DNA of 64,000 nucleotides, from the IMG/VR virus record IMGVR_UViG_3300044846_005229, positions 124,001-188,000 of that record; one strand, 5' to 3'. Position 1 is the first letter of the stretch; each line of letters starts with the position of its first letter. Of the stretch, positions 9,161 to 48,364 are shown one piece after another. The translations under genes were made by a program, and so were the position numbers. The notes beneath the pieces were generated by a model that worked only from the letters and a program-made list of their open reading frames with translations, was not told the origin of the DNA and made no database searches.

Positions 9161-9625
9161 TCAAACCGCAACCACAGCAACCTTGGCAGTCTTACGGGGG
9201 GCACGCTTGCGAGCAGGGGCAGGGGCCGGTGCAGGGGCGTCGGCGGTCGCAGAGGCCTTGGTTGCCTTGGTCGTCTTAGTCGTCTTGGCGCGGCTCTTAC
9301 GGGCAGGGGCCGGTGCAGCAGCCAGCAGGGCGATAGGGCCACTTGCGGCCATCAGGACGGGAACCTCAGCGGGCACGACAATTTCCTGGAACTCAATAGC
9401 GATGCCATCGATGGCTTCAACCGTGGCCCTAGCCAGGGCAGCCAACTGATCGTTGCGGGCATCGATAGCCTCGCGGGTTTGACAACCCAGATCATAGGCA
9501 GAGTCTGCCGTGATGGTGACCACGGCGATAGCGTAAGCGATCACAATGCCAGCAATGCGGGCAGCCTTCTCAAGGGTGGGGGCCCAATCGGCTTTCAGGA
9601 TGGTTGCGATGGTGGTGGTGGCCAT
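9161..9625 (-). CDS. cassette gene with K/A/P-rich basic C-terminal tail
   Basis: PARKSRAKTTKTTKATK...PARKRAPRKTAK; TTGACA-N17-TACAAT promoter. Confidence 0.7.
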   Translation of the reverse strand: MATTTIATILKADWAPTLEKAARIAGIVIAYAIAVVTITADSAYDLGCQTREAIDARNDQLAALARATVEAIDGIAIEFQEIVVPAEVPVLMAASGPIALLAAAPAPARKSRAKTTKTTKATKASATADAPAPAPAPARKRAPRKTAKVAVVAV

Positions 9626-10039
9626 GGGTGGCGTTTCGCTTGGGACCCCTTAATTGTAAGCCATGGGTGGCCGGGTGTCAAGGTGCTGGCGGTTTTGTTT
9701 GCATTTCGTAATAATGCCAGTGGGAGTAATACAAACGTACTAGCTCACCCGGTGAGTTTGCGCTTCGGGTGTCGCGGTCCGGTGAGTTTGCCGGTCGGTG
9801 AGTTTGCGGTCCGGTGAGTTTACGCTTCGAGTGTGATGTTACAAAACTTAACACATCGGGGCAGGGAGTTTGACGGCAATGAGTTAGCCGCCCGGTGTCA
9901 ACACAAAACTTAACATTCCGGTAGCAATTTGACGGCAATGAGTTAGCTATTGGGTGTCAACACACCATGGCAGGGAGCATGTGAAACCAGCATAAAGAAA
10001 GGCCGCCGATTGGCAGCCCTTTACTATGCGGACTTTCGT

Positions 10040-10429
10040 TCACAAAGGGTTGAAATTATCATCCACATCATCCATTCTTTCAAACGTAGGGCAATGTAGC
10101 AGATTGCCACTTTGTGCATACCCGTCGATGACATATTGTGAATATTGCTTAATGTTTTGAACAGCATCTTTGCTGTCTACTGTATCCACGAACTTGCCCA
10201 TGTTATAGTATGAAATCTGATCACCATTGTGGAAGTGATAAACCCTCTTTAGAATGAGACGCATCCCACTCACAAAGAACTCCATATCGACTTGACATTC
10301 GTCCCCCACCCCAAAGTATACGGGGAATGTATACAAATCGTTAGGGGAGGGATTAGCCCAAGGGCTGGAATTTTCCCACTGAAGGGTAACTGAAGTCGTC
10401 CCACGGGAAATGATCGAGGGGGTGGGCAT
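10040..10429 (-). CDS. cassette gene, hypothetical
   Basis: Own promoter at 10453 and downstream hairpin. Confidence 0.7.
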   Translation of the reverse strand: MPTPSIISRGTTSVTLQWENSSPWANPSPNDLYTFPVYFGVGDECQVDMEFFVSGMRLILKRVYHFHNGDQISYYNMGKFVDTVDSKDAVQNIKQYSQYVIDGYAQSGNLLHCPTFERMDDVDDNFNPL

Positions 10430-10732
10430 GGTGCGTTCCGGTTGACTCTGTAATTATAGCATGGGGCGGGAGCCTGCTGTGGGTTTCCGGGAGTTTTGTT
10501 TGCATTCCGTAATAATGCCGGGTCGGTGAGTTTACGCTTCGGTAAGTTGACTATCGGGTGCGATGTTACAAAACTTAACATTCCGGTGGCAGTTTGCGGT
10601 TCGGGTGTGATGTTACAAAACTTAACACATCATGGCAGGGAGTTTGACGGCAGGGAGTTAAACCTTGAACAGCAAAAATACCGACTACAAAAAGGTCCCG
10701 GCGAACCGGGACGGGTGGGGGGGCCAAGGCCA

Positions 10733-10963
10733 TCATGCGAAGCCGTAGCGTTGCATTAGGGCCTTAGTGGCAATGCGTTCTGCCCCCGTCATGTAGTCCA
10801 ACAGGTGTTCAGCGCCGTCTGCGGAGACCTCCTCGAATGCCTCTTCTTTCTTGATTCCATAGTGGCTGGAAATGTTGCCCAGAATGTTATCCCGGGTGGC
10901 TGCATCAATCGCAACGAGGAAAACGTAGTTCAGCCTGCCCTGGGGAACGGTGGTGGTGGTCAT
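10733..10963 (-). CDS. cassette gene, hypothetical
   Basis: Start MTTTTVPQG; promoter at 10989; UUCG terminator. Confidence 0.7.
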   Translation of the reverse strand: MTTTTVPQGRLNYVFLVAIDAATRDNILGNISSHYGIKKEEAFEEVSADGAEHLLDYMTGAERIATKALMQRYGFA

Positions 10964-11297
10964 TTGCCTTTCGGTGCGGGACCCCCTAATTGTAGCACAC
11001 TGCGGGGGCCTGCTGTGGGGTGCCGGTGGTTGTCGGTAGTTTTGTTTGCGTTTTGTTACCATTGGGAATTAGCCGCCAGGAGTAATACACTTGTACTAGC
11101 TCACCCGGTGGTATAATCCCGCAGGCACTTTACGCTTCGGGTTAGTTGTAACAAAACTTAATAATCCGGTGAGTTAACTACCGGGTGCCAACACAAAACT
11201 TAACACATCGTGGCAGGGAGTTTGACCGTAATGAGTTAAACCCCCAAACAGCAAGCCCCAGCAAAGCCAGGGCAGTAGCAACAACCTGATGCAACCC

Positions 11298-11504
11298 TCA
11301 ACCTCGCGCAACCCTGGCAAAGTCCAGATCGGGATAAACCACCAGCTCCCTAGGCAGGCTGCGGGCGCGACGGGCCCAGGCGTACTCGTCGGTGTACATC
11401 GCCTCGATGCGGGCATTATCACGGGCCACGACAGCGGTGATACGCTCACGGGCGGCAGCGCGGCGGTCGGAGGCGATCTGGGCGCGGTAGGTGGTGGGGG
11501 CCAT
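11298..11504 (-). CDS. cassette gene, hypothetical
   Basis: Promoter at 11532. Confidence 0.65.
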   Translation of the reverse strand: MAPTTYRAQIASDRRAAARERITAVVARDNARIEAMYTDEYAWARRARSLPRELVVYPDLDFARVARG

Positions 11505-11888
11505 TTGCCGTTTGGTGCGGTTGACTCTGTAATTGTAGCATATGGCCGGGGGTGCTGGGTGGTGCCGGTAGGTGCCGGGGGGTTTTGTTTACGTTTGGTT
11601 GCCATTGGGGGTTAGCCGCCAGGAGTAATACACTTGTACTAGCTCACCCGGTGAGTTTACGCTTCGGGTGTGATGTTACAAAACTTAACAATCCGGTGGC
11701 AGCTTCACGGCAATGAGTTAGCTATCCGGTGTCAACACAAAACTTAACATTTCTGGGGTAGCTTCACGGCAATGAGTTAGCTATCCGGTGTCAACACAAA
11801 ACTTAACACATCAAGGCAGGGAGTTTGACGACAAAGAGTTATCGCACCGGCCAGCAAAAAGCCCCCGGATGATGGAGGCAGTATGGGC

Positions 11889-12179
11889 TCAATCAACGAT
11901 AGCTGACCACTCGTTGGCATCAATGCCAGGGTGGACGTGTGCCTCGTAAAGACGGGTGCCGTCAGTGAGCTGGGCGACACAGAGGTAGTGATCTGTTTGG
12001 GCCATGCAACCAGCAATGTGGAGAACCGCGCCGGTTGCGGCGTGGCGAAAATCGGCAAGGTCGCTGATATAAGTGGTGCCGATGACAGCAGATTGCTTGC
12101 GCATGTACGGGGTGCTGGCACGCTCGGCAGCCTGCTCGGCGATGGTCAGAACCTCTTCGTCGGTGAGGGTGGTGGCCAT
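11889..12179 (-). CDS. cassette gene, hypothetical
   Basis: Start MATTLTDEE; promoter at 12208. Confidence 0.7.
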   Translation of the reverse strand: MATTLTDEEVLTIAEQAAERASTPYMRKQSAVIGTTYISDLADFRHAATGAVLHIAGCMAQTDHYLCVAQLTDGTRLYEAHVHPGIDANEWSAIVD

Positions 12180-12256
12180 GGGTGACTCCCGGTTGGTGAC
12201 TCTGTGATCATAGCATGGATGGGCCAGGGAACGCAAGCCCCCTAACCCCGTGGCGC

Positions 12257-12418
12257 TCAGGCGACTCTGACGTGGAGGCCCCGAGCGATCTCTTTAAGTT
12301 CGGACTCAGAGCGGAAAACCAGCATGAGCCAGAAATCTCCGGTGACTTCAAGATTGTTAGCCTTGATGACGTTCATGATGTCGTGGCGGAGGGCTTGCTT
12401 GCGTTGGGTGGTGGTCAT
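12257..12418 (-). CDS. cassette gene, conserved cyanophage small protein
   Basis: Start MTTTQRKQ; LEVTGDFWLMLVFRSESEL. Confidence 0.7.
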   Translation of the reverse strand: MTTTQRKQALRHDIMNVIKANNLEVTGDFWLMLVFRSESELKEIARGLHVRVA

Positions 12419-12468
12419 GGGTGGCTCCCGGTTGGTTGACTCTGTAATTATAGCACGGGGCCGTAGAG

Positions 12469-12702
12469 TCAGCAATAAGCGTTTAGAGATCCGTATGGAT
12501 TGGCCGAAAGATTGAAAAAACCCTCGTAGCTTTCCGCTTCAGTGCGTGCCATTGGCATCAATGGAGGGGGTGACTGAGAGGAGCCCCACTGGTGGCGATC
12601 ATTTGCTCTAGCGAGGTGATGATGATGCTTAATCCTGGAGCGTGTTTCACTCCAGTAGCAAGCGGTTCCATGAAAGTAGCCGTAGCCGGTCGAATTGGTC
12701 AT
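12469..12702 (-). CDS. cassette gene, hypothetical
   Basis: Start MTNSTGYGY; promoter at 12735. Confidence 0.6.
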   Translation of the reverse strand: MTNSTGYGYFHGTACYWSETRSRIKHHHHLARANDRHQWGSSQSPPPLMPMARTEAESYEGFFNLSANPYGSLNAYC

Positions 12703-12757
12703 GGGTGGTGATGCCGGTAGTTTGGGACTCCGCAATTATAGCATGAATGGCAGGGGG

Positions 12758-12964
12758 TTAGTCGTCGTTCCAGCATTGGCACCTAGGGTCAAGTACCCCA
12801 CAGCCCCGGCACGCCATCGAGATGAGACGCAATCGCTCGTCATCGCTTAGCTGTGCAAACTTAGCGGCAGCAGCCCCAAACTTACTTTCAACCGGCTTCC
12901 ATGACCCGTCTGGAGTGGTGCGAAACCAGAGAATGCCGCCCTCAAACTTCTCTTCGTAATACAT
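12758..12964 (-). CDS. cassette gene with C-terminal Cys cluster
   Basis: CRGCGVLDPRCQCWNDD; promoter at 12989. Confidence 0.7.
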   Translation of the reverse strand: MYYEEKFEGGILWFRTTPDGSWKPVESKFGAAAAKFAQLSDDERLRLISMACRGCGVLDPRCQCWNDD

Positions 12965-13087
12965 AGTGCCTTCGGGGTGGTGACTCTGTAATTATAGCAG
13001 GTTGGGGGCCGTAGCTGTGGGCGCTGTTGAGTTTTGTAACAATCGATGCGGAAAGGGGTCACCGGCTGGCAACCCCCCCCTTAGCAA

Positions 13088-13360
13088 TCAGCCCATCCCC
13101 GCAACCCTAGCAAGCTCTTGCATGGTGCAGGGGGAAGAACCCATCAGAGGCAAAATCGCAACTTCCATATGCGAATGCAGATTCTGCCAGCGAATAGCAG
13201 CAGCAGCAGCATCCTCAATGGACCAGCCTTCTACGGGGCCACCCTGCAGGAACCAGCGGCGCTGATGGGCTGTGGGGGTCTCAGGCTTGACGCGAGCCCA
13301 CAGGCGGTAGGTTGTTGCCGGGGCGGCGGGTTGCATCGGGGCGGTGGTTGCAGTAGCCAT
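13088..13360 (-). CDS. cassette gene, hypothetical
   Basis: Start MATATTAP; promoter at 13389. Confidence 0.65.
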   Translation of the reverse strand: MATATTAPMQPAAPATTYRLWARVKPETPTAHQRRWFLQGGPVEGWSIEDAAAAAIRWQNLHSHMEVAILPLMGSSPCTMQELARVAGMG

Positions 13361-13501
13361 CGTTGCGGTGTCGGTTGGGGACCTCGTAATTATAGCACAG
13401 GGGGCCAGAGAACACAATCCCTAACCCCTCGTGACGGCAGGCAGGGGGCCAACACAGTGTCAACCCCATGGCATTGTCAACCCTTGGGCATTGTCAACCC
13501 C

Positions 13502-13741
13502 TCAAACGGCAGCCAGGGCATCCAGGGCGGCAGCCAGGGCGGTGGAGGGGAAGTAGCGGTCCTCACCTTCGCAGATATCCGACAGGCACCAGCGGAAACC
13601 ACGACGGGTCGCATCAGCGGTCAGGATGTAGTCGGCACCTTTGAAGAAGGCACGGGATCCTTCGCTAAATTCCACACCGGCAGGGAGGCCTTTGCGGATG
13701 GCAGCGTTGATCATGGCGGAGGGGGTTGTGAGGCAGACCAT
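13502..13741 (-). CDS. cassette gene, hypothetical
   Basis: Promoter at 13768. Confidence 0.65.
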   Translation of the reverse strand: MVCLTTPSAMINAAIRKGLPAGVEFSEGSRAFFKGADYILTADATRRGFRWCLSDICEGEDRYFPSTALAAALDALAAV

Positions 13742-14064
13742 TTGCCGGGGGGGTGCGTTACCTCGTAATTATAGCACAGGGCCGAGGGTGCTGGGGGGTT
13801 GCCGGTAGGTGCCGGTGGTTTTGTTTACATCTGGTAACATTGCCGGTCAATGAGTTTGCAGTTCGGTGAGTTAACTATCGGGTGTGATGTTACATAACTT
13901 AACATACTGGGGCAGGGAGTTTAACGGCAATGAGTTTACTGCCAGGTGGCGACACAAAACTTAACACATCAAGGCAGGGAGTTTGACGACAAAGAGTTAT
14001 TGCACCGGCCAACAAAAAAAACCCCGGCGAACCGGGGCAGGGGCAGGGCAGTATCGGGGGGGTA

Positions 14065-27445: not shown

Positions 27446-27811
27446 TCAATCCTTAGCGGTAATCTCAGCACCTTCCAGTAGTTTGGAAGCTAGGTCAGTA
27501 TCACCCGCCTTAATTGCGTTTTGGATGCGTTCTTTCAAGGTTAGCTCGTATGACCATTTTCGGCCGTTGATGGTGCCCCTGACATTGCCCCCGACAGAGC
27601 CCTCGACAGAGCCCCCGACAGAGCCCCCGACAGAGCCCCTGACATTGCCCCCGACAGAGCCCCTGACATTGCCCCCGACAGAGCCTAGGACATCACCCAA
27701 GACACCACCCCTGACATTGCCCCCGACAGAGCCCTCGACATCATTTACCCGCCATTCACCGCTGATTCTGGTGAAAGTAACTAGTTTTTTAATTTCTTCA
27801 ATGCTTGGCAT
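27446..27811 (-). CDS. repeat protein (GSVGGNVR repeats, beta-solenoid-like)
   Basis: 12/24-bp tandem coding repeats at 27575-27740. Confidence 0.7.
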   Translation of the reverse strand: MPSIEEIKKLVTFTRISGEWRVNDVEGSVGGNVRGGVLGDVLGSVGGNVRGSVGGNVRGSVGGSVGGSVEGSVGGNVRGTINGRKWSYELTLKERIQNAIKAGDTDLASKLLEGAEITAKD

Positions 27812-28002
27812 TTCAATTTAGGGGTTTGATGATGTCATGGTGTGTCCGGTGGTTGGTGACAAAGGAATTATAGCATGGGTCCGGCAGACAGTCAACCCTT
27901 AGGGACCTGGGGCCACACCCCAAACAGCAAAAAAAAGGGGGGGGCCGATGCCAACGGCACCAACCCCCCCCCCAAGCAATCGGCCGATACCGACGGCTCC
28001 AA

Positions 28003-28260
28003 TCAGCTAGCCACTGCAAGCAGCCGATCAGCCACTGCACCCTTCGCAGTACGCTTCCCATCGAGATAATACAAGGTATAAACTCGCCCCGGCTTCACAC
28101 TGGGGGTTACCGTAACGGTCAGGGCCTTGCCGTTGATGCGGATGGCAGTTTCGGCCTTTGCGCCGGATGCTGTAGCTTGTTGCACGGTGTTGGCTTCAGT
28201 GGTATCAAGGCGGGCAAGCAGGGTGTCAAACTTACGGATGGTCAGAGGGGGAGTAGCCAT
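28003..28260 (-). CDS. cassette gene, hypothetical
   Basis: Start MATPPLT; promoter at 28307. Confidence 0.65.
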   Translation of the reverse strand: MATPPLTIRKFDTLLARLDTTEANTVQQATASGAKAETAIRINGKALTVTVTPSVKPGRVYTLYYLDGKRTAKGAVADRLLAVAS

Positions 28261-28425
28261 GGTTGTGGGTGGGTTGTGTTGTGGGGTGAATCCCCGGGAC
28301 CTTGCCATTATAGCCCAGGTGAGAGACGGTTGTCAATGCTTGACTGGTGGCAAGATCCCCCGAGGGTCACCATATTATGGCATATTGCCGGAGTTATTGC
28401 AACCTGCTGCGTTGGCGACCAGGGG

Positions 28426-28522
28426 TTGACAACCGCCGGAATCCACGCTATAATATGCACATAACCAAACGAGGGGCGAGGTAGCCCTGAAGACGAAAAA
28501 GGTCGCCACGGAACCTGCTTGC
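28426..28522 (+). ncRNA. plus-strand sigma70 promoter and putative structured RNA, copy 1
   Basis: TTGACA(28426)-N17-TATAAT(28449) then GGGGCGAGGTAGCCCTGAAGACGAAAAAGGTCGCCACGG; no ORF. Confidence 0.55.
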
Positions 28523-28638
28523 TTATAGTTATTACCGGACAGTAAAAAAAGGGGGGTTGACCCTCGGGTTTTATCCCAGAGTCATAGCCCCGGAGCCACA
28601 ACCCCGGAGTCACAACCCCAGAGTCAAACCCCACGCAC

Positions 28639-29091
28639 TCAAGAATTACGGGCAATGACTTTTTTCAGGAAGTCCAAACCATCTTCATTGGTAACAAAGA
28701 AATGGGATCCAGCCTCATCACCTAGCAATAGTTGGCCAGCTGTAGAAGGCAATTTGGAGAATCCTACTTCCCCCGCCATCACTTGGGCGGTTCCCGCGAT
28801 ACAATGGACCGTACCACATTCGTTGAAGGCTTCTTTACCCGTAGTTTCTTTGCCAAGGTCGATACGAAACATTAAGGGACCCCATGCCTGATGCCAATTA
28901 GCCATATCAAAGTTTTTCAAATCACGCTCTACAATCCAACGCGCCACATGGTGAAGGTTAGCCCTTTGTTGCTCGGGGGTGAGTTTGATGCTGAGGTTTT
29001 CAGGAATATGGGGCAACGGGGGAAGGCCGGGAGTAGTATCCAGCTTCTGGAGATTTAGGCGAGTAGCTTCAGTTAGGGAAAGGGTTTTCAT
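28639..29091 (-). CDS. cassette gene, CGT..CIAG-motif phage protein
   Basis: Start MKTLSL; CGTVHCIAGTAQ. Confidence 0.7.
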   Translation of the reverse strand: MKTLSLTEATRLNLQKLDTTPGLPPLPHIPENLSIKLTPEQQRANLHHVARWIVERDLKNFDMANWHQAWGPLMFRIDLGKETTGKEAFNECGTVHCIAGTAQVMAGEVGFSKLPSTAGQLLLGDEAGSHFFVTNEDGLDFLKKVIARNS

Positions 29092-29252
29092 GGTTTTGGA
29101 AGGGGGGGTTAGTTGCCTGGTTGGTTGGTTGGTTGACTCTGTAATCATAGCACAGGGCCAGGGGAAGGTCAACCCTTAGGGACCTAGGGCCACAACCCCG
29201 GAGTCAATACCCTGGAGTCATAGCCCCCAATCCCCAATCCCCAATCCCAAAG

Positions 29253-29726
29253 TCATGCCGCAGCAAACTGCTTATTCCGGGAATAGAAACGCTCACAGCC
29301 ATACTTGACCGCAATTTCATCCAAACTACCCGGATTGGAGCGGCTCCGGCCCAGCCCTGCAGGCTTCCAGAACCAGCATTTCCGGCCACTATGCCAGCGG
29401 CACCCCAGAGCCTTAAGGTCTTCCTTAACGGGCTTGGTATCACCCGTGACCCATACCCATAGGCCAATCAGGCTGATATCAAGGTTGGGAATCTTAAGCA
29501 ATTCCGCAATCTGATCCATGATGGCCTGCTCGGTTTTTTCCGTATAGCGGTAGGTCCGGCCATCGTCCTCTTGACCGTTGCAGGCTGCCAGGGCCTCGTG
29601 GTAGGCGGCATTAAGGGCCTTCATGGTTTCCAGATCGCCACCAAGATCAGGGTGGTGCTTGCGAGCCAGATCACGGTAAGCGCTTTTGACTTGCTCAACA
29701 GTGGTGAGGCCAGTGAAGAATGTCAT
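29253..29726 (-). CDS. J-domain (DnaJ-like) protein
   Basis: VKSAYRDLARKHHPDLGGDLETMKALNAAY with intact HPD. Confidence 0.9.
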   Translation of the reverse strand: MTFFTGLTTVEQVKSAYRDLARKHHPDLGGDLETMKALNAAYHEALAACNGQEDDGRTYRYTEKTEQAIMDQIAELLKIPNLDISLIGLWVWVTGDTKPVKEDLKALGCRWHSGRKCWFWKPAGLGRSRSNPGSLDEIAVKYGCERFYSRNKQFAAA

Positions 29727-29966
29727 TGCCGGTTCCAGGTGGTGGGTGACTTTGGTAGTGTAGCATGGTTGCCGGTGGGTCGTCAACCCCCCCCCTTTTT
29801 TAGGGGAAGGTTAAAACCGCTACCTGCTGACCCATGAATTATAGCATGTCCGAGGGCCAACTGTGGATGGCCGGAAGTTAGTGCCCATAGGCTGACAGCG
29901 GGTTCGGGGGGCCAACTGTGGATGGCCGGGAGTTAATGCTCATGGGCCGACACATTGCCGAAGGGG

Positions 29967-30064
29967 TTGACAAGACTAGGGTAGTCGCCCTATAATAAGC
30001 AAACAATCAGAGAAGGGGCGGGGTAGCCCTGAAGACGAAAAATGTCGCCACGGCCCCTACTTGC
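29967..30064 (+). ncRNA. plus-strand sigma70 promoter and putative structured RNA, copy 2
   Basis: TTGACA(29967)-N18-TATAAT(29991) then AGGGGCGGGTAGCCCTGAAGACGAAAAATGTCGCCACGGCCCCT. Confidence 0.55.
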
Positions 30065-30426
30065 AATTAAAGAGTTTATGCCATTGAGTTTATGCCATGG
30101 TGCATTTTGCGAGTAATGTAGAAGTCTAGGGTGTGTTTTCGGAGTTAATGTAGAATGCCAAGGGTGCTTTTTCTGGGTAATGTGGAAACCCCCAAATTGA
30201 AAATCGAAAATTCATTCCCTGAGATCCGTTGCAGGGCAACGGAGTTACTCCTAAAATTTTTGAATTTTTTAGGACCTAATGAAAAAACGATCCAAAAGTT
30301 CCACATTTGAATGCAAATTCTGCACCCTACTATCATATATTCGCGAAAAGTATATTTAATAGAAGACTCTTATGTATAGTTCCATAACCAATAAGAAATC
30401 CTTATCACTGCACCCTCCATTCAAAG

Positions 30427-30800: not shown

Positions 30801-31184
30801 TCAGCGCCGGTACAAATATCCCCCAGCCCAATCAGCCCGCTGATAGCAACTCTCAGGGTCCTCCAACAAATTGTAACGAATTCCTTTGGCAGGAGACTTC
30901 CAATTGGCTGCCTTGTAAACGTCCCCGGTTACCCGATCGATGAAAGCATGAATAGAACGATTGCCGGACGTTGACATTATGATTTTCAGATACTTGCGCC
31001 CTTCCTCCACTGAGAATATCGGGGCATAACCCTTGCCAACCCCATCAGGATTAAACCGCGCCGAGCTATCAGCCAGAACCGCGCATAGCTTGAGGGTGGC
31101 GGTGAGAACCGGGCTAGGTGCCTTAGGGGTGGTAACCTCAGGGGCGGTAGCTTCGGGATTCGTGGCCAGTTCGGTAGCAATCAT
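30801..31184 (-). CDS. conserved cyanomyovirus protein
   Basis: KYLKI...SIHAFID..TGDVYKAANWKSPAKGIRYNL...ADWAGGYLY. Confidence 0.8.
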   Translation of the reverse strand: MIATELATNPEATAPEVTTPKAPSPVLTATLKLCAVLADSSARFNPDGVGKGYAPIFSVEEGRKYLKIIMSTSGNRSIHAFIDRVTGDVYKAANWKSPAKGIRYNLLEDPESCYQRADWAGGYLYRR

Positions 31185-31792
31185 GGCGGGTCGGGAACGG
31201 CGGTGTTTGGTTCCTTGCCATTTTACACCATTGGAACCCGGATCGTCAAGGGGCCACCAGGGGAATTGCCGAGGTATTGTCAAGGCATCGTCAAGGGGCC
31301 ATCAGGGTCCGCTAAGGAAGCCATGCGACCAAAAAACACACAAAGTCAAGGGACCCCACCGAGCCGAGGCTCAGAAACCCAGTCACTGTCAGGGATTTTC
31401 CCTTACTGTGGTTGTCTTCATTTGAGAATGCCCTAGGTGGGTGTTCCTAATTGTTGTTACCAAAGTTTCAAACCTGAAAAATTGAAAAATTTGAATTTAT
31501 TATATTTTTCTATTATACCAACACACTATAATGTCATAATGCCATAACAGTATAACACTATCGTTATATGAGCATAAAGTCATTTTGATCTTGGGGGGCA
31601 CCTTGACACTACATATCATGGCACCGTCTCACAGTAACTTCATTGCGCTAACACTATGCCATCATAACACTATCGTTATACGATTATAGAGTCATTAACC
31701 CTGGGGACTAAAGCGTGTCTGGGGGGCATAGGAGTAATGTGGCGCGGTAAGTTGCCAGTGGGCGATGATTATGGTATAGGCAGACCCGGCAA

Positions 31793-36772: not shown

Positions 36773-37537
36773 TTAAAGTGTCACTTCAAACGTTCCGTGA
36801 GAATCGTCCTTTGCATTCCTCTTAAGAAAGGGCGCAATTCCTAGCCAATCGTTATGCGTTACCGGGTAGAACACATGAAGATAACTACTGATGTGCTCAG
36901 GAATTCTACTAGAAAAATACTTATCGGCTTTCACCAATTCGTAAATTTTTGCGTAGGTTTCTTGATCTGGACGAATGATAACCTTGCTGATGCATTGATC
37001 ATAATCATATTCACAGCTATAATAAGAAATGTTCTCAATTTTCAAGTCATCTTTATTAAGAACCCAGGGATGTCCTTTAAGATACTCCAAAAGTTCAGGA
37101 AGATTGAAGTATTTGTTGTTGAACTGAGAGTCAATGTAATTAAACCCACGCGGAAGAGTATAAGGAACAGCATTTGAATCAAAAAACATATGGCCAGAAC
37201 TATAAATCCAAACAAGATTCTCTTCAGAAATGTTACCTTCAAGAATCTCCTCATCACTCATTTCGTGATATTCATAGGTCCAGAACGGATTATAAGTTTT
37301 AATGAATTCAAAGAATGAGTCCCTAACTAATGCCGGTCTGCATTCTTTAAGAACTTTCAGGCTTTTATCTTTGACCGCATTGATAACTTCAACTACTGCG
37401 GAAGTCTTACCTGATGGCTCCACCGTGGTAGTCGTCACTTGAAGATAGGCAAGACTCTTATCCACACCGGGAATAATGTAAGATACAATCTCCGTAAATG
37501 TTGTGTGACGGGTATTTTCAAATGGTGCGAGTTTCAT
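36773..37537 (-). CDS. hypothetical protein, paralog of 52595-53323
   Basis: 172-bp identical core 37050-37221 = 52836-53007. Confidence 0.8.
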   Translation of the reverse strand: MKLAPFENTRHTTFTEIVSYIIPGVDKSLAYLQVTTTTVEPSGKTSAVVEVINAVKDKSLKVLKECRPALVRDSFFEFIKTYNPFWTYEYHEMSDEEILEGNISEENLVWIYSSGHMFFDSNAVPYTLPRGFNYIDSQFNNKYFNLPELLEYLKGHPWVLNKDDLKIENISYYSCEYDYDQCISKVIIRPDQETYAKIYELVKADKYFSSRIPEHISSYLHVFYPVTHNDWLGIAPFLKRNAKDDSHGTFEVTL

Positions 37538-38512: not shown

Positions 38513-39898
38513 TCACAAAACCTCAGGTAAAACATAGCCTTTAATTTTCGCAACCCGCTTATTCAAAATAGCCCAATCATCCAAATCCTTAAACCTAAAG
38601 TGAGCAGACCCCTTCAGGAATACCTTAAACTCAAAGAATCCCCAATCTTGCCATACCCCTGGTTCCAATCGGTCTTTGCCACAAACAGGGTCCTTAACGG
38701 CATCATAATCTTTGCCAGTCAAAGTAGATAGGACCTTAATTAAGTCCGCTACCTTATAGTAATTAGTCTGATAGGATCTAACAGATACGGTCCCCCCACT
38801 CCAATCTTTCTCCGCAAAGTACGGCAAAATAAACTTCTTCCCAAATAAATACTGCTCATTGGTCTTCCATCCTTCTACACCATGTCTATTATCGTGATAA
38901 TGCTTAGTGAAAGCATCGAAAACTTGCTCTACAGTCCTATCCAATCGCTGATCCTGAGTTGCAATAACGATCTCCAACATCCTGTAGATATTCCTCATTG
39001 TAAACGGAACCTTACTTTGTTGCTCCACAAACCTGTTAATATCTTTAAGCAATTCCGTAGTTGCCAATTTCTCCATTCCCATCTTACTAAATACAAATTC
39101 CCACGCTGATCTTTGCAGGTCTTTTTGAAAGTCATTCCTTGCTTTTGCCTGGCCATTTTCCGTACAAACAAATGCGATATTTGATTTGTAAAATCCGCTC
39201 AGCACCCTATTTATACCAACTGCAGACTCAATCTGCCTATCATAAATCCTGCAGGCTTCCACGTATCGGTTGACAATATCCCTAACAAAATTATACGGAA
39301 TCAGACCTTCCCCTTCAGCTTCAATTGCATCGGGACCCATAAAGAACCCATTAAACTCAGCATCAGAACCCAAGGCAGGCTTCCTAAGGGTAACTAATCC
39401 TATTGCCACATCCGTAGAACGCTCCGCACCCTTAAAGACCTCACCCAAGTTCTCAACGTGCCCATAGTTTCTAATTAGGGTCCCCAATTGCCTACGCGCC
39501 AAAGAATATTCATTTCGTACAGTCTCCCAATTACATAATGACACAATTTGACACCCTGGCGGTGCAATCTCGAAGGCATAGTTAATATGTTTTTCGTCCC
39601 CACTGAAAGGGGGATTCATTATGATGAAGTCCACATGGCTTATTGCTTCCGGTTGAACATCCAGGAAGTCGGTGCCAATTAGTTTACATTGTTTTGCTGC
39701 CAGGATTGCCCTGAGGTTATCATCAATTTCACACGCCAGAACTTCACTAGCCCCATATTGCAAGCAACCTTCTACCAAATTGCCAGAACCTGCGGATGGC
39801 TCCAGAACAACTTTGCCATTCAAGTCGAATGGGGCTAGCATGTAGGATATTACGTGTTCCGGGGTCGGATAATAGTCTTTGTTGTTATAGGATGGCAT
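38513..39898 (-). CDS. N6-adenine DNA methyltransferase with DUF4942 domain
   Basis: DYYPTP, VLEPSAGSG (motif I), IMNPPF (motif IV), WGFFEFKVFLKGSAHFRFKD C-terminus; start MPSYNN. Confidence 0.85.
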   Translation of the reverse strand: MPSYNNKDYYPTPEHVISYMLAPFDLNGKVVLEPSAGSGNLVEGCLQYGASEVLACEIDDNLRAILAAKQCKLIGTDFLDVQPEAISHVDFIIMNPPFSGDEKHINYAFEIAPPGCQIVSLCNWETVRNEYSLARRQLGTLIRNYGHVENLGEVFKGAERSTDVAIGLVTLRKPALGSDAEFNGFFMGPDAIEAEGEGLIPYNFVRDIVNRYVEACRIYDRQIESAVGINRVLSGFYKSNIAFVCTENGQAKARNDFQKDLQRSAWEFVFSKMGMEKLATTELLKDINRFVEQQSKVPFTMRNIYRMLEIVIATQDQRLDRTVEQVFDAFTKHYHDNRHGVEGWKTNEQYLFGKKFILPYFAEKDWSGGTVSVRSYQTNYYKVADLIKVLSTLTGKDYDAVKDPVCGKDRLEPGVWQDWGFFEFKVFLKGSAHFRFKDLDDWAILNKRVAKIKGYVLPEVL

Positions 39899-40081
39899 TG
39901 GGTTCCGGTGGGTAATGGTGGGATGACCGGTAGTGGGGGTTAGTGGCGGGGGGAATAGCTGGTAATGAGGGGTAATGGGGAAGGGTGGATAGGCAGGGTA
40001 CCAGTTAGTTGCGGTGGGAATGATTGATAGCGACGATGGCCACAAGCGGTCAGACCCCCAAAGTCAACCCAAAGTCAAACC

Positions 40082-40503: not shown

Positions 40504-41370
40504 TCAAACCCAATCCTCAGCTTCTTTCCGAGTCATATAGAAATGAATACCGTTAGTACACTCAATCCGAATATCGTCATCATAACTATCTGCAACCACA
40601 ATCTCGCCTTCCTCGTATTCAAGGGCATTCCAAGTATGGATAGGGGAGTTGCCGGACCCTTCCAAGACTAAAACATGGGACGCCCTACATTTCCTACCCA
40701 CCAATGTAGAAGTTCTCTTAGCATCTTCTGGGATCAGGATTTTGATAACCCCTGTATCAACTTTTTTGAACGCAATAAATGACCCCTCCTCTGGGACTAA
40801 TTGAAAGGGGGGAAGAGTTGCACCCCGGAGATCAGCACCCTGGAGAATAGCACCCCGGAGAATAGCACCCCGAAGATTAGCATCCCGGAGATCAGCATCC
40901 TGGAGATCAGCACCCCGGAGATCAGCACCCTGGAGAATAGCACCCCGGAGAATAGCACCCCGGAGATCAGCACCCCGAAGATTAGCATCCCGGAGATCAG
41001 CTTCCTGGAGATTAGCACCCCGGAGATCAGCACCCCGAAGATTAGCATCCCGGAGATTAGCACCCTGGAGATCAGCATCCCGGAGAATAGCACCCCGGAG
41101 ATCAGCATCCTGGAGATTAGCACCCCGGAGAATAGCACCCCGGAGATCAGCACCCCGGAGATCAGCATCCCGGAGAATAGCACCCTGGAGAATAGCACCC
41201 TGGAGAATAGCACCCCGGAGATCAGCACCCCAGAGAATAGCACCCTGGAGATCAGCACCCCGAAGATTAGCATCCCGGAGATCAGCATCCTGGAGATTAG
41301 CACCCCGGAGATCAGAAAACGGCCCAATAACGTACTCAGACCCGTTGATTAGCATTGTTTTGGAAGACAT
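40504..41370 (-). CDS. pentapeptide-repeat protein with DUF5758-like C-terminus
   Basis: About 35 A(D/N/I)L(R/Q)(G/D) repeats; GRKCRAS, IECTNGIHFYMTRKEA. Confidence 0.9.
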   Translation of the reverse strand: MSSKTMLINGSEYVIGPFSDLRGANLQDADLRDANLRGADLQGAILWGADLRGAILQGAILQGAILRDADLRGADLRGAILRGANLQDADLRGAILRDADLQGANLRDANLRGADLRGANLQEADLRDANLRGADLRGAILRGAILQGADLRGADLQDADLRDANLRGAILRGAILQGADLRGATLPPFQLVPEEGSFIAFKKVDTGVIKILIPEDAKRTSTLVGRKCRASHVLVLEGSGNSPIHTWNALEYEEGEIVVADSYDDDIRIECTNGIHFYMTRKEAEDWV

Positions 41371-41546
41371 TGTTTTTGGAGAATGGGTATTGGTGGGGGG
41401 TTGATTGGGAGCGGTTTGCCCTGGCAACGGGCCCCACTATCTCACTATAGCATGGTGCCGGGGCAGTGTCAACCCCCATAGCTTCAACCCCTAGGTCAGA
41501 TAAGTATAAATACCTACCCACCCAAACAGTATAAGCACTAAGGCCA

Positions 41547-43127: not shown

Positions 43128-44555
43128 TTACCCCGAAACCCTGACATCCCTAATCTCTATACCCTCAGCTTCCAGCAACTCCCGGAGCCTATCTGCCTCC
43201 TTAAAATCACGGTTAGCCCTTGCGATATTACGTTTTTCAATTAGTGCTTGAATACCATCGCTTTTTGGTTTTTGAGGTGCGGGAACCTCATGAACTAATC
43301 CTAAAATTCCGGCCAATTCACATAAGAGCCTCCAACGATTTAGAATTTCCCTATTTTCATCGCCCGCTGATACGATGGGGCGAGCCAAATAGAACAATTC
43401 CCCGATGGCTACAGACGTATTAAGATCATCATTGAGTGCCGAAATGAAACGATCTTGACTATTTTTTAAGTCTGTAGTTAAAATCAAGGGTTCATTCGTT
43501 TGCTGACTATCGCCATGTTGACTAATTCCATGCCGACTAACATCATGCTGACTAGCCCCATGCCAACTATCACCATGCCAACCAAACCCCAATGCAGCAT
43601 TTAATACTTTCCAACCATTGATCGCGGGCACCATTGCTTCCGAATTAAAATCTATCGGCTTTCTATAGTGGGCTTGTAATACGAATAATCTAATGGTCAT
43701 AGGGCTAATTCCTGATCCAATTAGGTCTCTGATGGTTGTGAAATTCCCTAAGGATTTAGCCATTTTCTCTTCCCCAACCGTGACAAACCCATTATGAAGC
43801 CAATACCTGGCTAGTTCAGCCCCATTGGCGGCCTCCGACTGGGCTATCTCGTTTTCGTGGTGAGGAAAGATCAGGTCGGCTCCGCCCAAATGAATGTCAA
43901 TCGTGTCGCCCAACTCCCCGCGCACCATAGCCGAACATTCAATGTGCCAGCCGGGACGGCCCCACCCCCATGGTGACGGGTACCCATGGTCAATAGGCAT
44001 TGCCCCTTTCCAAAGAGCAAAATCAAAAGGGTGGCCCTTCTTTGAGTCGCTATTAACCTGTTGTTGGCCAAGGTTGCGACCACTTAGTTTCCCGTACCCC
44101 TTAAACCCCACAACCGAGAAGTACATATCACCACCCATAGAATAAGCAAACCCTTTATCAGCAAGGTCTTGAATCATGGTGCGGATTGCATCAAGACTAC
44201 GGGTAACCCTTGGCATTTTGTCGGCAGGCAGGATGTTCAATGTGCCCATGTCTTCCTCAAAGGCCTTAATATTGCGCTCACTGACGGCCCCGATTGTTAC
44301 TCCTTCGGAGTTGGCTTTGGCTAGAATTTTATCGTCGATATCCGTATAATTTTGAACAAACGTAACCTCATACCCATGCCACATAAAATTACGCCTTAAG
44401 ACATCCCACACGATATAACTACGGGCGTGCCCTAAGTGGCATAGATCATAAACGGTAACACCGCAACAATACATCGACACTTTGCCTGGAACCAGCGGGA
44501 TAAACTTCTCTTTGGTTTTAGTTAGGGTGTTGGTTAGGGTAATGTCGTTAATCAT
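43128..44555 (-). CDS. cysS: cysteinyl-tRNA synthetase
   Basis: MYCCGVTVYDLCHLGHAR (HIGH), DFALWK, GRPGWHIECSAM, DIHLGGADLIFPHHENEIAQSE, KMAKSLGNF, DF.EADRLR. Confidence 0.97.
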   Translation of the reverse strand: MINDITLTNTLTKTKEKFIPLVPGKVSMYCCGVTVYDLCHLGHARSYIVWDVLRRNFMWHGYEVTFVQNYTDIDDKILAKANSEGVTIGAVSERNIKAFEEDMGTLNILPADKMPRVTRSLDAIRTMIQDLADKGFAYSMGGDMYFSVVGFKGYGKLSGRNLGQQQVNSDSKKGHPFDFALWKGAMPIDHGYPSPWGWGRPGWHIECSAMVRGELGDTIDIHLGGADLIFPHHENEIAQSEAANGAELARYWLHNGFVTVGEEKMAKSLGNFTTIRDLIGSGISPMTIRLFVLQAHYRKPIDFNSEAMVPAINGWKVLNAALGFGWHGDSWHGASQHDVSRHGISQHGDSQQTNEPLILTTDLKNSQDRFISALNDDLNTSVAIGELFYLARPIVSAGDENREILNRWRLLCELAGILGLVHEVPAPQKPKSDGIQALIEKRNIARANRDFKEADRLRELLEAEGIEIRDVRVSG

Positions 44556-46937: not shown

Positions 46938-48125
46938 TCACTGATTAGCCCTGATTTGAACAGGCATCACCAGATAGGTGTATCTTGCCGTATCAATAGA
47001 ACCAATCGGGAAAAAAACTGCCGGTGTTGTCGGGGCGTTCATTTGAATTTGAACTTTATCCGCACCCATAACCTTAGTTTTCAGGACTTCAATCAGGTAA
47101 CGCACATTAAATGCGATTGTGATTTCCGGACTATTACCAATGACCGTCAAACTCTCATTAAATGACATCATTCCTTCGGCTTGAGCACTAATTGTGGCCC
47201 CAACCTCAGTAAACTCAAACTTGACTACATTATTATGGGCATTAGCCACAATGGCAGCTTGCTCAAGTGTAGTCAGCAGAGAAAGACGATCAAAGACAGC
47301 AACCGACTTGAAATTATCAGGAATCAACTGCCGATAGTTAGGGTATTGCCCATCTACCAATCGGAATTGAACCTTATAGTTACCATACACTACGGTAACA
47401 TCTTGCTTGGATACAGTGAAGGAAACCGGACTAAACTTAGGCTTAGCACCGATAATCTTAGCAATCTCTGCAAGGATCTTAGCGGGCATCGTAAAGTTAA
47501 ATTCCGTTTCCCCGGTATCAACAATATCATCCAAAGTCAAAACCGACAACCTATGCCCATCCGTAGCAGCAAAAGACAAAGAATTGCCAGCAAGTTGCAG
47601 GTTGATCCCGGTAAGGAGCACCTTAGCTTGGTCCGAACTTGCCGAAAACAGGGTACTACCCAGGCCACCAACAAACTCAGCAGGTTGCACGCCGAACGTT
47701 ATTGGATCGGTAGTAATACTGGCTGTGACTGGCAAACTCGGAAAATCGTCGGCAGGGATCGTATTGATCTTAACTGTCGCACCTTTATCTGCAGAAACCA
47801 ACAACTTATCGTCAGAATCACCAGGATCAAAACTAAGGGTGACCGCCGAAGTCTTGGGCACCCCGTTTACGATATCCTTAAGGGTGAACACCGAAGCAGT
47901 AATTGAACCTGGAGACTCCACCGATGCAGCAATATCGACTGATACTTGTTTGATGAAACCGGAATTATTTCCTAGGTCAAATACCGTGGCCACTAACTTG
48001 CCTGAAGCACCATCAGCGGTAAGCAACACATTGAAGAGAACAGGGTGCTTAGCCCGCTTATCATAGTTCCGTGCCAGATCTTTAAGAGCCTGGCTGAGAT
48101 CGGATTGGGCAACTACGGCTTTCAT
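46938..48125 (-). CDS. dnaN: DNA polymerase III beta sliding clamp
   Basis: HPVLFNVLL, ASSDQAKVLLTGINL, FAATDGHRLS, RLVDGQYPNYRQLIP, IAFNVRYL..VL, YLVMPVQIR. Confidence 0.95.
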   Translation of the reverse strand: MKAVVAQSDLSQALKDLARNYDKRAKHPVLFNVLLTADGASGKLVATVFDLGNNSGFIKQVSVDIAASVESPGSITASVFTLKDIVNGVPKTSAVTLSFDPGDSDDKLLVSADKGATVKINTIPADDFPSLPVTASITTDPITFGVQPAEFVGGLGSTLFSASSDQAKVLLTGINLQLAGNSLSFAATDGHRLSVLTLDDIVDTGETEFNFTMPAKILAEIAKIIGAKPKFSPVSFTVSKQDVTVVYGNYKVQFRLVDGQYPNYRQLIPDNFKSVAVFDRLSLLTTLEQAAIVANAHNNVVKFEFTEVGATISAQAEGMMSFNESLTVIGNSPEITIAFNVRYLIEVLKTKVMGADKVQIQMNAPTTPAVFFPIGSIDTARYTYLVMPVQIRANQ

Positions 48126-48364
48126 GTGACAGGGGGGTAGATGGTTTGGGAATGATGGACTCTGGGAGACAGCGGGCCAAAACCCGCTACTCACAAGGTA
48201 ATTATAGGGGACAGGGGGCCAAATGTCAACCCCCTTGCCCTGGGTATCGGTGTTGGTATTGCTGGCATTGCTGGTATTGCTGGAATTCGATCAACTCCTA
48301 GCCGACTCTTAGCCAACTCGTGGTCAACTATCAATCGGCCATTAGAATTAACGCATGGCCACAA

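What the first reader, a model, noticed from the sequence alone, without database searches (positions are those of the whole stretch)
28426..30064. The only clear plus-strand promoters drive two copies of a conserved structured non-coding sequence
Seen: consensus TTGACA/TATAAT at 28426-28454 and 29967-29996. About 20 nt later both have GGGGCG(A)GGTAGCCCTGAAGACGAAAAA(G/T)GTCGCCACGG..CCT(G/A)CTTGC, while the surrounding DNA differs and there is no ORF. It folds as a junction: AGGGGC/GCCCCT (or GGCG/CGCC) closing GGG-TAG-CCC and GAC-GAAAAAN-GTC. It matches no riboswitch or ribozyme I recognise. Copy 2 reads into the last 200-bp element. Inference: a new phage sRNA (protein sponge or RNA antitoxin mimic) or a primer/R-loop RNA for an origin.
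Basis: partly seen in the sequence, partly recalled or inferred. Interest (0 to 1): 0.7.

Follow-up and report, generated by a model that had tools for sequence, protein, structure and literature searches.

The report
New cyanophage small RNA family
Two perfect promoters that point against every neighbouring gene of a 279-kb lake cyanophage each make a short non-coding RNA whose hairpin-and-kink core recurs in about a hundred other freshwater cyanophage sequences and in no described RNA family, so it is a new phage RNA gene whose job is still unknown.

Summary
The sequence observation holds. The two sites are the only perfect sigma-70 promoters on the plus strand of the whole 279-kb phage, and each is followed by the same ~50-nt block with no ORF. 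The block is not peculiar to this phage. Pattern and covariance-model searches found about 78 distinct copies, in T4-like freshwater cyanophages (Kyanoviridae) and in relatives of this non-T4 jumbo phage. Each copy has a -10 box at a fixed distance, lies antisense to the flanking genes, and usually carries a hairpin about 60 nt downstream. None was found in Rfam 15, in 121 host-family genomes, or in marine S-PM2 and Syn9.

Covariation instead supports one hairpin, GGGGC/GCCCU with loop RRGGUA (0 of 500 shuffles reach it). An invariant GA lies 5' of this hairpin, and a 3-nt variable bulge plus an invariant GA lies 3' of it. That is the sequence signature of a kink-turn.

Best reading: a new family of early-expressed, structured phage small RNAs that probably act in trans by binding a protein. 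Expression and function are untested. An origin-primer role is unsupported.

The parts
28426..28454 (+). Copy 1 promoter: -35 TTGACA 28426-28431, 17-nt spacer, -10 TATAAT 28449-28454. Predicted start is A at about 28461.
   Evidence: (12/12). The -10 hexamer lies 16 nt before the GA in 64 of 78 homologues.
28461..28472 (+). Copy 1 leader (AUAACCAAACGA). Its last two bases, G28471 and A28472, are the conserved GA directly 5' of the hairpin (proposed non-bulged strand of a kink-turn).
   Evidence: Alignments A3 and A4: A invariant and G in at least 90% of copies.
28473..28488 (+). Copy 1 hairpin H1: 5' arm GGGGC 28473-28477, loop GAGGUA 28478-28483, 3' arm GCCCU 28484-28488.
   Evidence: RNAalifold consensus. 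Covariation: 99.6% of cells paired, 3 of 5 pairs with compensatory changes, 0 of 500 shuffles as good.
28489..28493 (+). Copy 1: 3-nt bulge GAA (28489-28491), variable in sequence and constant in length, then invariant G28492 A28493 (proposed tandem G.A pairs).
   Evidence: no indel here in any copy; GA invariant.
28494..28522 (+). Copy 1 3' conserved block: variable segment YG NNAA NNN, invariant UCGCCAC (28503-28509), tail with CCUGC (28514-28518).
   Evidence: No helix is supported by covariation here.
28551..28573 (+). Copy 1 probable 3' end: hairpin GGGGGGUUGACCCUC followed by GGGUUUUAU. It is flagged as a terminator on both strands. Predicted RNA is about 113 nt (28461-28573).
   Evidence: (sites on + and - strands).
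29967..29996 (+). Copy 2 promoter: -35 TTGACA 29967-29972, 18-nt spacer, -10 TATAAT 29991-29996. Predicted start is A at about 30003.
30003..30014 (+). Copy 2 leader. A30013 A30014 precede the hairpin; this copy has AA instead of GA.
   Evidence: Alignment A3.
30015..30030 (+). Copy 2 hairpin H1: GGGGC 30015-30019, loop GGGGUA 30020-30025, GCCCU 30026-30030.
30031..30064 (+). Copy 2: bulge GAA 30031-30033, GA 30034-30035, variable segment, UCGCCAC 30045-30051, tail with CCUAC.
30065..30347 (+). Region that copy 2 reads into: GAGTTTATGCCAT x2, then the last copy of a ~300-nt repeated intergenic element. No convincing plus-strand terminator. Only a weak hairpin at 30092-30134 with a U-rich tail, plus hairpins at 30226-30242 and 30249-30274. 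The 3' end of copy-2 RNA is undefined.
28523..29989 (-). Two-gene segment between the copies. It holds ORFs 28639-29094 and 29253-29727 (the latter with a weak DnaJ-domain hit), both on the minus strand with their own promoters. The segment is absent from a relative that has a single hybrid copy.
   Evidence: L041/L025 join 28426-28522 directly to 29990-30358.

Best explanation
Each site is a self-contained gene for a small non-coding RNA. Copy 1 is about 110 nt; the 3' end of copy 2 is undefined.

Shown or strongly implied: the genes belong to a large, previously undescribed family carried by freshwater picocyanobacterial phages of at least two unrelated lineages. A -10 box sits at a fixed distance upstream. 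The RNA strand is always opposite to the flanking genes. The 5' domain contains a 5-bp hairpin (GGGGC/GCCCU, loop RRGGUA) that is maintained by compensatory changes.

Inferred: the hairpin is the canonical arm of a kink-turn. An invariant GA lies directly 5' of it, and a 3-nt bulge of free sequence followed by an invariant GA lies 3' of it. The invariant unpaired blocks (GAYG, UCGCCAC, CCUGC) are contact surfaces.

Proposed mechanism: host RNA polymerase makes the RNA from consensus promoters as soon as the DNA enters the cell. The folded kink-turn domain then acts in trans by binding and titrating or redirecting a host or phage protein during take-over. The family has spread between unrelated phages that share a host, and it is absent from host genomes. 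Both points fit a host-directed function.

My odds: a real, transcribed, structured ncRNA family, about 0.85. A kink-turn, about 0.5. A protein-binding trans-acting role, about 0.35-0.4.
For: - Promoters. Both are 12/12 and are the only perfect plus-strand ones in the genome. A TAnnnT hexamer lies 16 nt (64 copies) or 14 nt (12 copies) before the core in all 78 distinct copies.
- Family size. Pattern scans gave 70-75 viral and 28 metagenomic loci. Covariance model R1 gave 95 + 48 matches, including divergent second copies.
- Structure. Hairpin H1 is 99.6% paired. Pair types are GC/AU/CG, GC/UA and CG/AU/UA/UG. Sixteen cells carry a change on both sides. No shuffle of 500 is as good, and slid partners are far worse. 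RNAalifold finds only this helix.
- Strand. The closing pair is G.U in 43 of 45 sequences, which would be A.C on the other strand.
- Kink-turn signature. The GA and NNN-GA flanks are invariant or nearly so, with no indel in the bulge.
- Not coding. 1-nt and 2-nt indels occur within the block and there is no start codon.
- Orientation. The RNA is intergenic and antisense to neighbours in every context, including independently annotated phages DSL-LC03 and S-SRM01.
- Carriers. G001-G004 are T4-like (Gp23; psbA in two), whereas G000 lacks Gp23. G000's CysRS is 58-60% identical to Cyanobium/Synechococcus enzymes.
- Absences. No Rfam match. No credible match in 121 host-family genomes.
- 3' end. 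A hairpin with a U-rich tail ends a median of 61 nt after the core in 47 of 76 copies.
Against: - No direct evidence of transcription. No RNA run was listed for the small RNA. The one metatranscriptome holds only a depth-3, unstranded contig of a relative, and that contig also spans the neighbouring gene.
- Only one helix is supported. The non-canonical arm of the proposed kink-turn has no defined pairing partner beyond the two G.A pairs, and no other covarying helix was found.
- Window copy 2 has AA instead of GA before the hairpin, and the weak 'type 3' copies have CG or AG there.
- No L7Ae-family protein occurs in five carrier phage genomes, and the cyanobacterial control genome does not ring for that family. 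The classical kink-turn binder is therefore missing and no partner is known.
- 29 of 76 copies lack a canonical terminator on the RNA strand.
- Homologues were first collected with exact patterns, so invariance of the anchor segments is partly imposed. The model-found divergent copies mitigate this but are few.
Confidence: 0.4

Rival explanations
1. Cis-acting transcription device. The strong promoter faces the oncoming early genes and shares a bidirectional terminator with them. It serves as an insulator, or as a source of antisense and colliding transcription. The conserved 5' RNA could then act on its own polymerase, as the HK022 put RNAs do, to carry it through terminators and shut off the convergent genes.
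For: The RNA gene is convergent with the upstream gene in every context. The hairpin after copy 1 scores as a terminator on both strands. 29 of 76 copies have no canonical terminator on the RNA strand, and copy 2 has none for about 300 nt. There are two promoter-proximal structured copies, as with putL/putR (from my own knowledge).
Against: An insulator needs no 50-nt conserved transcript with a covarying hairpin. 47 of 76 copies do have a hairpin plus U-tail about 60 nt downstream. No plus-strand genes exist for an antiterminator to serve. There is no sequence or fold similarity to put, which has two stem-loops.
Confidence: 0.2
2. Base-pairing regulatory sRNA. The invariant unpaired UCGCCAC and/or CCUGC act as seeds that pair with host or phage mRNAs, and the 5' hairpin gives stability.
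For: Invariant stretches of 5-7 nt lie outside any supported helix. The layout of promoter, about 100 nt, then a terminator hairpin is that of classical bacterial sRNAs.
Against: No target was identified, and the seeds are too short for a meaningful genome scan. Conservation extends over about 40 nt, including the GA flanks and the loop, which is more than a seed model needs. The tail after UCGCCAC falls into G-rich and C-rich classes with the same core.
Confidence: 0.15
3. Ligand-sensing, riboswitch-like aptamer carried on a free-standing sRNA. A kink-turn lets the conserved loop dock on the conserved 3' block to form a pocket, and ligand binding changes what the RNA sequesters or whether it terminates.
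For: Many invariant unpaired nucleotides surround a kink-turn-like element, as in the SAM-I, lysine and c-di-GMP-II riboswitches (from my own knowledge). Loop U and the purine before UCGCC are compatible in 44 of 45 sequences: U-G, U-A, and once C-G. The G-rich and C-rich tails can each displace one arm of H1, which would be a possible switch.
Against: No gene lies downstream on the same strand in any context. The loop-to-3' pairing rests on one variable column. No tail-to-terminator relationship was found, since the same terminators occur with both tail classes.
Confidence: 0.12
4. Primer or R-loop RNA of a replication origin. The G-rich 5' RNA stays hybridised behind the promoter and primes DNA synthesis.
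For: The RNA starts with G runs (GGGGCGGGG). In this phage and its close relatives, copy 2 is followed by iteron-like repeats. The genome-wide maximum of cumulative GC skew lies at window position 32329, which is 2.3 kb from copy 2.
Against: Compensatory changes keep the hairpin while lowering G content (GC to AU/UA), so selection acts on RNA folding and not on hybrid stability. T4-like carriers have the RNA without iterons, followed by a terminator. The skew turn coincides with a change in base composition between gene blocks, and the maximum is not at either copy.
Confidence: 0.08
5. DNA-level element: a protein-binding or recombination site that marks the borders of mobile gene cassettes, with the promoter incidental.
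For: A relative has one hybrid copy exactly where this phage has two copies bracketing two genes. Copy number varies from 1 to 4 between genomes. The surrounding region is full of repeated intergenic modules.
Against: Covariation preserving a hairpin with strand-specific G.U pairs and a fixed promoter distance point to an RNA. Recombination between copies is expected of any repeat.
Confidence: 0.05

Closest known systems
Kink-turn (K-turn) RNA motifs, e.g. Kt-7, box C/D and U4 snRNA K-turns, and the K-turns of the SAM-I, lysine and T-box RNAs
   Same: A Watson-Crick helix is followed on one strand by a 3-nt bulge of free sequence and then GA. The other strand carries GA directly before the helix. 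These four purines are the most conserved bases.
   Different: The canonical helix here is a capped 5-bp hairpin with a conserved RRGGUA loop. The non-canonical helix is not defined. No L7Ae-type protein is found in the phages or in a cyanobacterial control. The geometry is untested.
Classical phage- or prophage-encoded small RNAs (lambda OOP, DicF, T4 species 1/2 RNAs, cyanophage S-PM2 CfrI antisense RNA)
   Same: Short non-coding transcripts made by host polymerase from phage DNA, often antisense in orientation to neighbouring genes.
   Different: There is no sequence or structure similarity. This RNA does not overlap a coding region. It is conserved across unrelated phage lineages and occurs in 1-4 paralogous copies.
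HK022 putL/putR polymerase-utilisation RNAs
   Same: Two copies of a conserved structured RNA encoded immediately downstream of strong early promoters.
   Different: put consists of two stem-loops and acts in cis to read through terminators into genes. Here only one helix is supported, no genes lie downstream, and most copies are followed by a terminator-like hairpin.
PeSL (promoter-early stem-loop) cassettes of T4-type phages (recalled from Arbiol et al. 2010, not re-read here)
   Same: Repeated promoter-bearing intergenic modules in regions of small early genes, and sites of recombination that shuffle gene cassettes.
   Different: PeSLs point the same way as the genes and have no conserved transcribed RNA. 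This element points the other way and encodes a conserved folded RNA.
Origin transcripts (ColE1 RNA II, T4 oriF/oriG RNAs)
   Same: A promoter-proximal, G-rich RNA next to repeats (copy 2 only).
   Different: Selection is seen on hairpin pairing, not on RNA-DNA hybrid stability. Most family members have no adjacent repeats.

Membership tests
Any Rfam 15 family | Score at or above the family's gathering threshold | tested here: not met
   Whole window: only 3 tRNAs. Region 28400-30250 at E<=10: one unrelated C/D-box hit at E=9.1, elsewhere on the minus strand.
Kink-turn motif | Canonical Watson-Crick helix adjoining the bulge | tested here: met
   H1 is 99.6% paired, with compensatory changes at 3 of 5 pairs and 0 of 500 shuffles as good.
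Kink-turn motif | Three-nucleotide bulge 3' of the canonical helix, sequence free | tested here: met
   Always 3 nt. Variants seen: GAA, GAU, GAG, GAC, GUA, GUU, GCU, GCG, GCC, AAU, UAA, ACU.
Kink-turn motif | Tandem G.A / A.G: GA after the bulge, and GA on the opposite strand directly before the helix | tested here: met
   G33 A34 are invariant. A13 is invariant in A3 and present in at least 90% of A4; G12 is present in at least 90%. Exceptions: window copy 2 and L055 (AA), and the weak type-3 copies (CG/AG). Only the sequence was tested, not the sheared-pair geometry.
Kink-turn motif | Non-canonical helix continuing beyond the G.A pairs; sharp kink on Mg2+ or protein binding | tested here: inconclusive
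   No covarying partner for the leader was found. The geometry is not testable with these tools.
Kink-turn motif | L7Ae/15.5K-family binding protein available | tested here: not met
   PF01248 is absent from G000-G004, and the Synechococcus elongatus control does not ring for it.
Riboswitch | Aptamer in the 5' UTR of a regulated gene on the same strand | tested here: not met
   No same-strand gene lies downstream in any context, including annotated records.
Type III antitoxin RNA (ToxI-like) or its phage mimic | Tandem array of short repeats next to, or matching that of, a toxin gene | tested here: not met
   Single units lie 1.5-5 kb apart, with no tandem array. There is no conserved neighbouring gene.
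RNA anti-CRISPR / solitary repeat unit | Sequence of a host CRISPR repeat | tested here: not met
   The 20-mer is absent from 185,579 species genomes apart from one chance hit. The model finds nothing above chance in 121 host-family genomes.
HK022 put-type antitermination RNA | Two stem-loops downstream of an early promoter, followed by terminators and genes that it reads through | tested here: not met
   The promoter-proximal position is met. Only one helix is supported, and there are no downstream same-strand genes.
tRNA / tmRNA | Cloverleaf or tRNA-like domain | tested here: not met
   ARAGORN finds only four tRNAs elsewhere in the window.
Replication-origin primer RNA | Location at the origin; persistent RNA-DNA hybrid | not testable with these tools
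   Only indirect evidence: the skew maximum is 2.3 kb away, and repeats follow copy 2 only.

The most novel reading that the evidence does not exclude
The RNA is a host-take-over riboregulator of a new kind. It would be a kink-turn-based aptamer that captures a specific picocyanobacterial factor, such as a ribosomal or RNA-polymerase-associated protein or a small ligand. Its G-rich or C-rich tail would toggle the hairpin. It would be valuable enough to have been exchanged between unrelated cyanophage lineages and kept in 1-4 copies.
Probability: 0.15. Interest if true: 0.8.

Novelty: new member of a known kind. Interest (0 to 1): 0.6.

Why it matters
Few phage-encoded small RNAs are known, and very few are conserved across phage families. 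This one is abundant in lake viromes and is shared by T4-like cyanophages and an unrelated jumbo phage. Its core is sharply defined and testable: a hairpin plus a kink-turn signature. It is driven by the strongest promoters on its strand, so it is probably made in quantity at the start of infection of freshwater picocyanobacteria. Finding its partner could reveal a new take-over or anti-defence route. The motif is also a handy marker for this group of phages, and its copies mark sites of gene-cassette exchange.

Tried and rejected
- Rfam at gathering and permissive thresholds: nothing.
- ARAGORN: nothing at the site.
- Hammerhead reading of CUGAUGA...GAAA: rejected by inspection. GUC, not GAA, follows the second element, and A31 is not conserved.
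Both are broken in divergent copies.
- Leader-tail closing helix: the same leader occurs with G-rich, C-rich and other tails, so there is no covariation.
- Minus-strand or plus-strand micro-ORF: rejected, because there is no start codon and the block has frame-breaking indels.
- Expression evidence: no RNA run was listed for the small RNA. Laying the one metatranscriptome on the window and on a T4-like locus gave only a depth-3 unstranded contig of a relative.
- Host mimicry: no match in Cyanobium PCC 7001. In 121 family genomes there were only about 20-bit hits, at the rate expected by chance.
- Cultured phages: only DSL-LC03 (a good copy) and S-SRM01 (weak copies) carry it. S-CRM01, S-PM2 and Syn9 do not.
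- Partner protein by co-occurrence: the only nearby protein shared between lineages, DUF7717, is also present in phages that lack the RNA. No L7Ae was found.
- Literature: no paper holds the core sequence in a relevant context or describes such an RNA.
- A 'relatives' search cannot be run for a virus record.
Full report
**1. What is in the window.**
The window is bases 124001-188000 of a complete 279,339-bp virus record with direct terminal repeats. Nearly all long ORFs lie on the minus strand. The region from 5 to 32 kb is GC-richer and packed with short minus-strand ORFs, each with its own sigma-70-like promoter.

TTGACA-17-TATAAT lies at 28426-28454 and TTGACA-18-TATAAT at 29967-29996, both 12/12. 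Of 21 sites in the window scoring at least 11/12, 19 are on the minus strand. Genome-wide the count is 36 minus against 3 plus, and these two are the only perfect plus-strand sites.

About 19 nt after each -10 box the same block begins, at 28473-28522 and 30015-30064. A 32-nt pattern from it occurs exactly twice in the window and in the genome, and in none of 100 shuffles. Similarity between the copies ends with this block. No plus-strand ORF follows either copy.

**2. It is a family, not a local repeat.**
A 20-mer from the block hit 9 IMG/VR contigs, 28 genuine metagenome contigs and no genuine prokaryote genome. Three hits lacked all flanking similarity and are chance matches.

Gapped patterns that freed one segment at a time raised this to 70-75 viral loci and showed that the middle of the block varies. 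A covariance model built from 60 distinct sequences (A3, R1) then found divergent extra copies:
- four copies in a 207-kb phage;
- second copies ('type 2') 1.5-5.3 kb from the first in many contigs;
- some weak 'type 3' copies.

In all 78 copies with distinct upstream sequence, a TAnnnT hexamer (4-6 of 6 matches to TATAAT) lies 16 nt (64 copies) or 14 nt (12 copies) before the core. The -35 box is good only in the jumbo-phage group.

With the motif placed on the plus strand, the believable genes on both sides are on the minus strand in every context examined. The same holds in the deposited annotation of Synechococcus phages DSL-LC03 and S-SRM01, where the match is intergenic and unannotated.

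A hairpin with a U-rich tail ends a median of 61 nt after the core in 47 of 76 copies. In copy 1 this hairpin is at 28551-28573 and scores as a terminator on both strands. The other 29 copies, window copy 2 among them, have no canonical terminator.

**3. Who carries it.**
Four other carriers searched whole (93-211 kb; two rated complete) have a T4-type Gp23 capsid gene, and two have psbA. Neighbouring genes include the Pfam families Kyano_Gp96, DUF6267 and DUF7227. These carriers are Kyanoviridae-like cyanomyoviruses.

The window's phage has no Gp23 match. Its cysteinyl-tRNA synthetase is 58-60% identical to those of Cyanobium, Synechococcus and Vulcanococcus. DNA runs that hold the region are lake-water metagenomes. 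The RNA is therefore shared by unrelated phages that probably infect the same freshwater picocyanobacteria.

The model finds nothing in Cyanobium PCC 7001. In 121 genomes of that family it finds only ~20-bit hits at the chance rate. It finds nothing in marine S-PM2 and Syn9 or in freshwater S-CRM01.

**4. Structure.**
Single sequences fold no better than shuffles, and they fold differently from one another. On the first 60 sequences no proposed structure beat the shuffles, because the search patterns had fixed the anchor segments. Adding the model-found divergent copies (A4, 45 sequences) settled the point.

Hairpin H1 is supported:
- It pairs GGGGC with GCCCU around a six-base loop RRGGUA.
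- 99.6% of cells are paired.
- Pair types are GU/GC, GC/AU/CG/GU, GC/UA, GC, and CG/AU/UA/UG.
- Three of five pairs and 16 cells show changes on both sides.
- No shuffle of 500 reaches any of four measures (one reaches the fifth), and partners slid by 1-3 columns fall to 39-64% paired.
- RNAalifold predicts this helix and nothing else.

On A4, 498 of 500 shuffles do at least as well. GGG/CCC is broken in L105:2379-2444. GGCG/CGCC is broken in the CGACAC variants. C34 faces A in about a third of sequences.

The closing G.U pair, present in 43 of 45 sequences, identifies the plus strand as the folded one.

**5. Kink-turn signature (inference).**
Directly 5' of H1 lies GA: A is invariant in A3, and G is present in at least 90% of copies. 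Directly 3' of H1 lie three bases of free sequence but fixed number, then an invariant GA.

This is the textbook arrangement of a kink-turn: a canonical helix, a 3-nt bulge, and tandem sheared G.A pairs. That description comes from established knowledge of the motif and was not tested here. I could not define the non-canonical arm. The leader is only about 11 nt and shows no covariation with any downstream segment.

One tertiary lead: loop U and the purine before UCGCC are compatible in 44 of 45 sequences, as U-G, U-A and once C-G. No L7Ae-family protein is encoded by five carrier genomes, and the cyanobacterial control genome does not ring for that family.

The remaining conserved bases (GAYG, UCGCCAC, CCUGC) lie outside any supported helix. 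The tail after UCGCCAC comes in a G-rich class (GGGGCAGCC) and a C-rich class (CCCCCUGCC) with identical cores. Each class can displace one arm of H1. I cannot say whether this is a switch or an accident.

**6. What it does.**
*Shown:* a conserved, strand-specific, folded, non-coding element with its own conserved promoter, in one to four copies, exchanged between phage lineages and absent from hosts.

*Not shown:* transcription. No RNA run was listed for the small RNA, and the one metatranscriptome was uninformative.

I commit to a trans-acting, protein-binding small RNA made early by host polymerase, with about 0.4 confidence overall. The reasons are these:
- the conservation pattern (helix plus invariant unpaired purines and blocks) is that of a recognition surface;
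- there is no gene for it to regulate in cis;
- its spread across lineages suggests a host-directed target.

The rivals are a convergent-transcription or put-like device, a base-pairing sRNA, a ligand-sensing sRNA, an origin primer and a DNA-level recombination site. They are scored separately.

The origin idea rests on three observations: iteron-like repeats after copy 2, a skew maximum 2.3 kb away at a compositional boundary, and G-richness. Against it, compensatory GC-to-AU changes show that selection acts on folding, and T4-like carriers lack the repeats.

**7. Local history.**
Relatives L005/L038 have both copies in the same order. L041/L025 have a single copy whose upstream matches window 27922-28522 and whose downstream matches 29990-30358. 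The two-gene segment 28523-29989 is therefore either an insertion or duplication bounded by the copies, or it was lost by recombination between them.

**8. Verdict.**
The sequence observation is confirmed and the proposed fold is not. 'New phage sRNA' is supported by comparative evidence, and its function remains open. This is a new RNA family within a known kind (phage small RNAs) and is of moderate to high interest.

Noticed in passing
window 15642, 18319, 18680, 21782, 22300, 25283, 25820, 30048 (each about 300 nt): Eight copies of a conserved intergenic element. Each holds GGGTGYGTTTT..TAATGTRGAA repeated 2-3 times, the hairpin CCGTTGC/GCAACGG, and an AT palindrome TCCTAAAA...TTTTAGGA whose centre occurs in two flipped versions, then a conserved 40-nt block. 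Read on the minus strand, its right end contains CTATAAATA, like a T4 late promoter. It may be a promoter plus leader for minus-strand genes. sRNA copy 2 abuts the last element.
   Followed up: partly
L041:4291-4647 and L025 versus window 28426-28522 and 29990-30358: A related phage has one hybrid sRNA copy and lacks the two genes that lie between the window's copies. The copies are therefore borders of a gene-cassette gain or loss.
   Followed up: yes
L003, L012, L050, L059, L076, L107 and others, just upstream of type-1 promoters and downstream of type-2 copies: Recurrent palindrome GTGCCA-N10-TGGCAC (with variants) in the intergenic DNA of the T4-like carriers. It may be an operator or an activator site. 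These promoters lack a -35 box.
   Followed up: no
L059:3356-3400, L055, L062, L076, L107 (after type-2 copies): The type-2 RNAs are followed by a conserved AU-rich inverted repeat, TTCTCAATAAG-loop-CTTATTGAGAA, with a variable loop and no U-tail. It could be a 3' hairpin of the RNA or a DNA palindrome.
   Followed up: no
window 27539-27752 and 40715-41390: Long in-frame tandem repeats inside minus-strand ORFs: a 12-nt period within ORF 27446-27811 and a 15-nt period with about 31 units within ORF 40504-41427.
   Followed up: no
window 43128-44555 (-), 46938-48194 (-), 38513-40045 (-); tRNAs at 14719, 60096, 62802, 63305: The phage encodes a cysteinyl-tRNA synthetase of picocyanobacterial type (58-60% identity), a DNA polymerase III beta clamp, a DNA methyltransferase-like protein with DUF4942, and four tRNAs (Met, Ser, Ile-UAU, Arg-UCU).
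   Followed up: partly
window 36820-37286 and 52609-53072: Two stretches of about 460 nt are 86-90% identical and lie 15.8 kb apart. This is a duplicated gene segment.
   Followed up: no
window 5900-14000: Further families of repeated intergenic modules, for example GAGTTGAC..GTGATGTTACAAAACTTAACATATCAGGGCRGGGAGTTT in six copies and AGTAATACACTTGTACTAGCTCACCCGGTG in four. The early region is built from shuffled regulatory cassettes.
   Followed up: no
window 32329 (genome 156329): The genome-wide maximum of cumulative GC skew lies here, and the minimum at genome position 99271. The turn coincides with the border between the GC-rich small-ORF block and AT-richer genes, although all genes stay on one strand.
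   Followed up: partly
window 30801-31283 (-): A DUF7717 protein is shared with all ten cyanophage genomes searched except one incomplete record, including phages without the sRNA. It is a general cyanophage gene carried by this non-T4 jumbo phage.
   Followed up: yes
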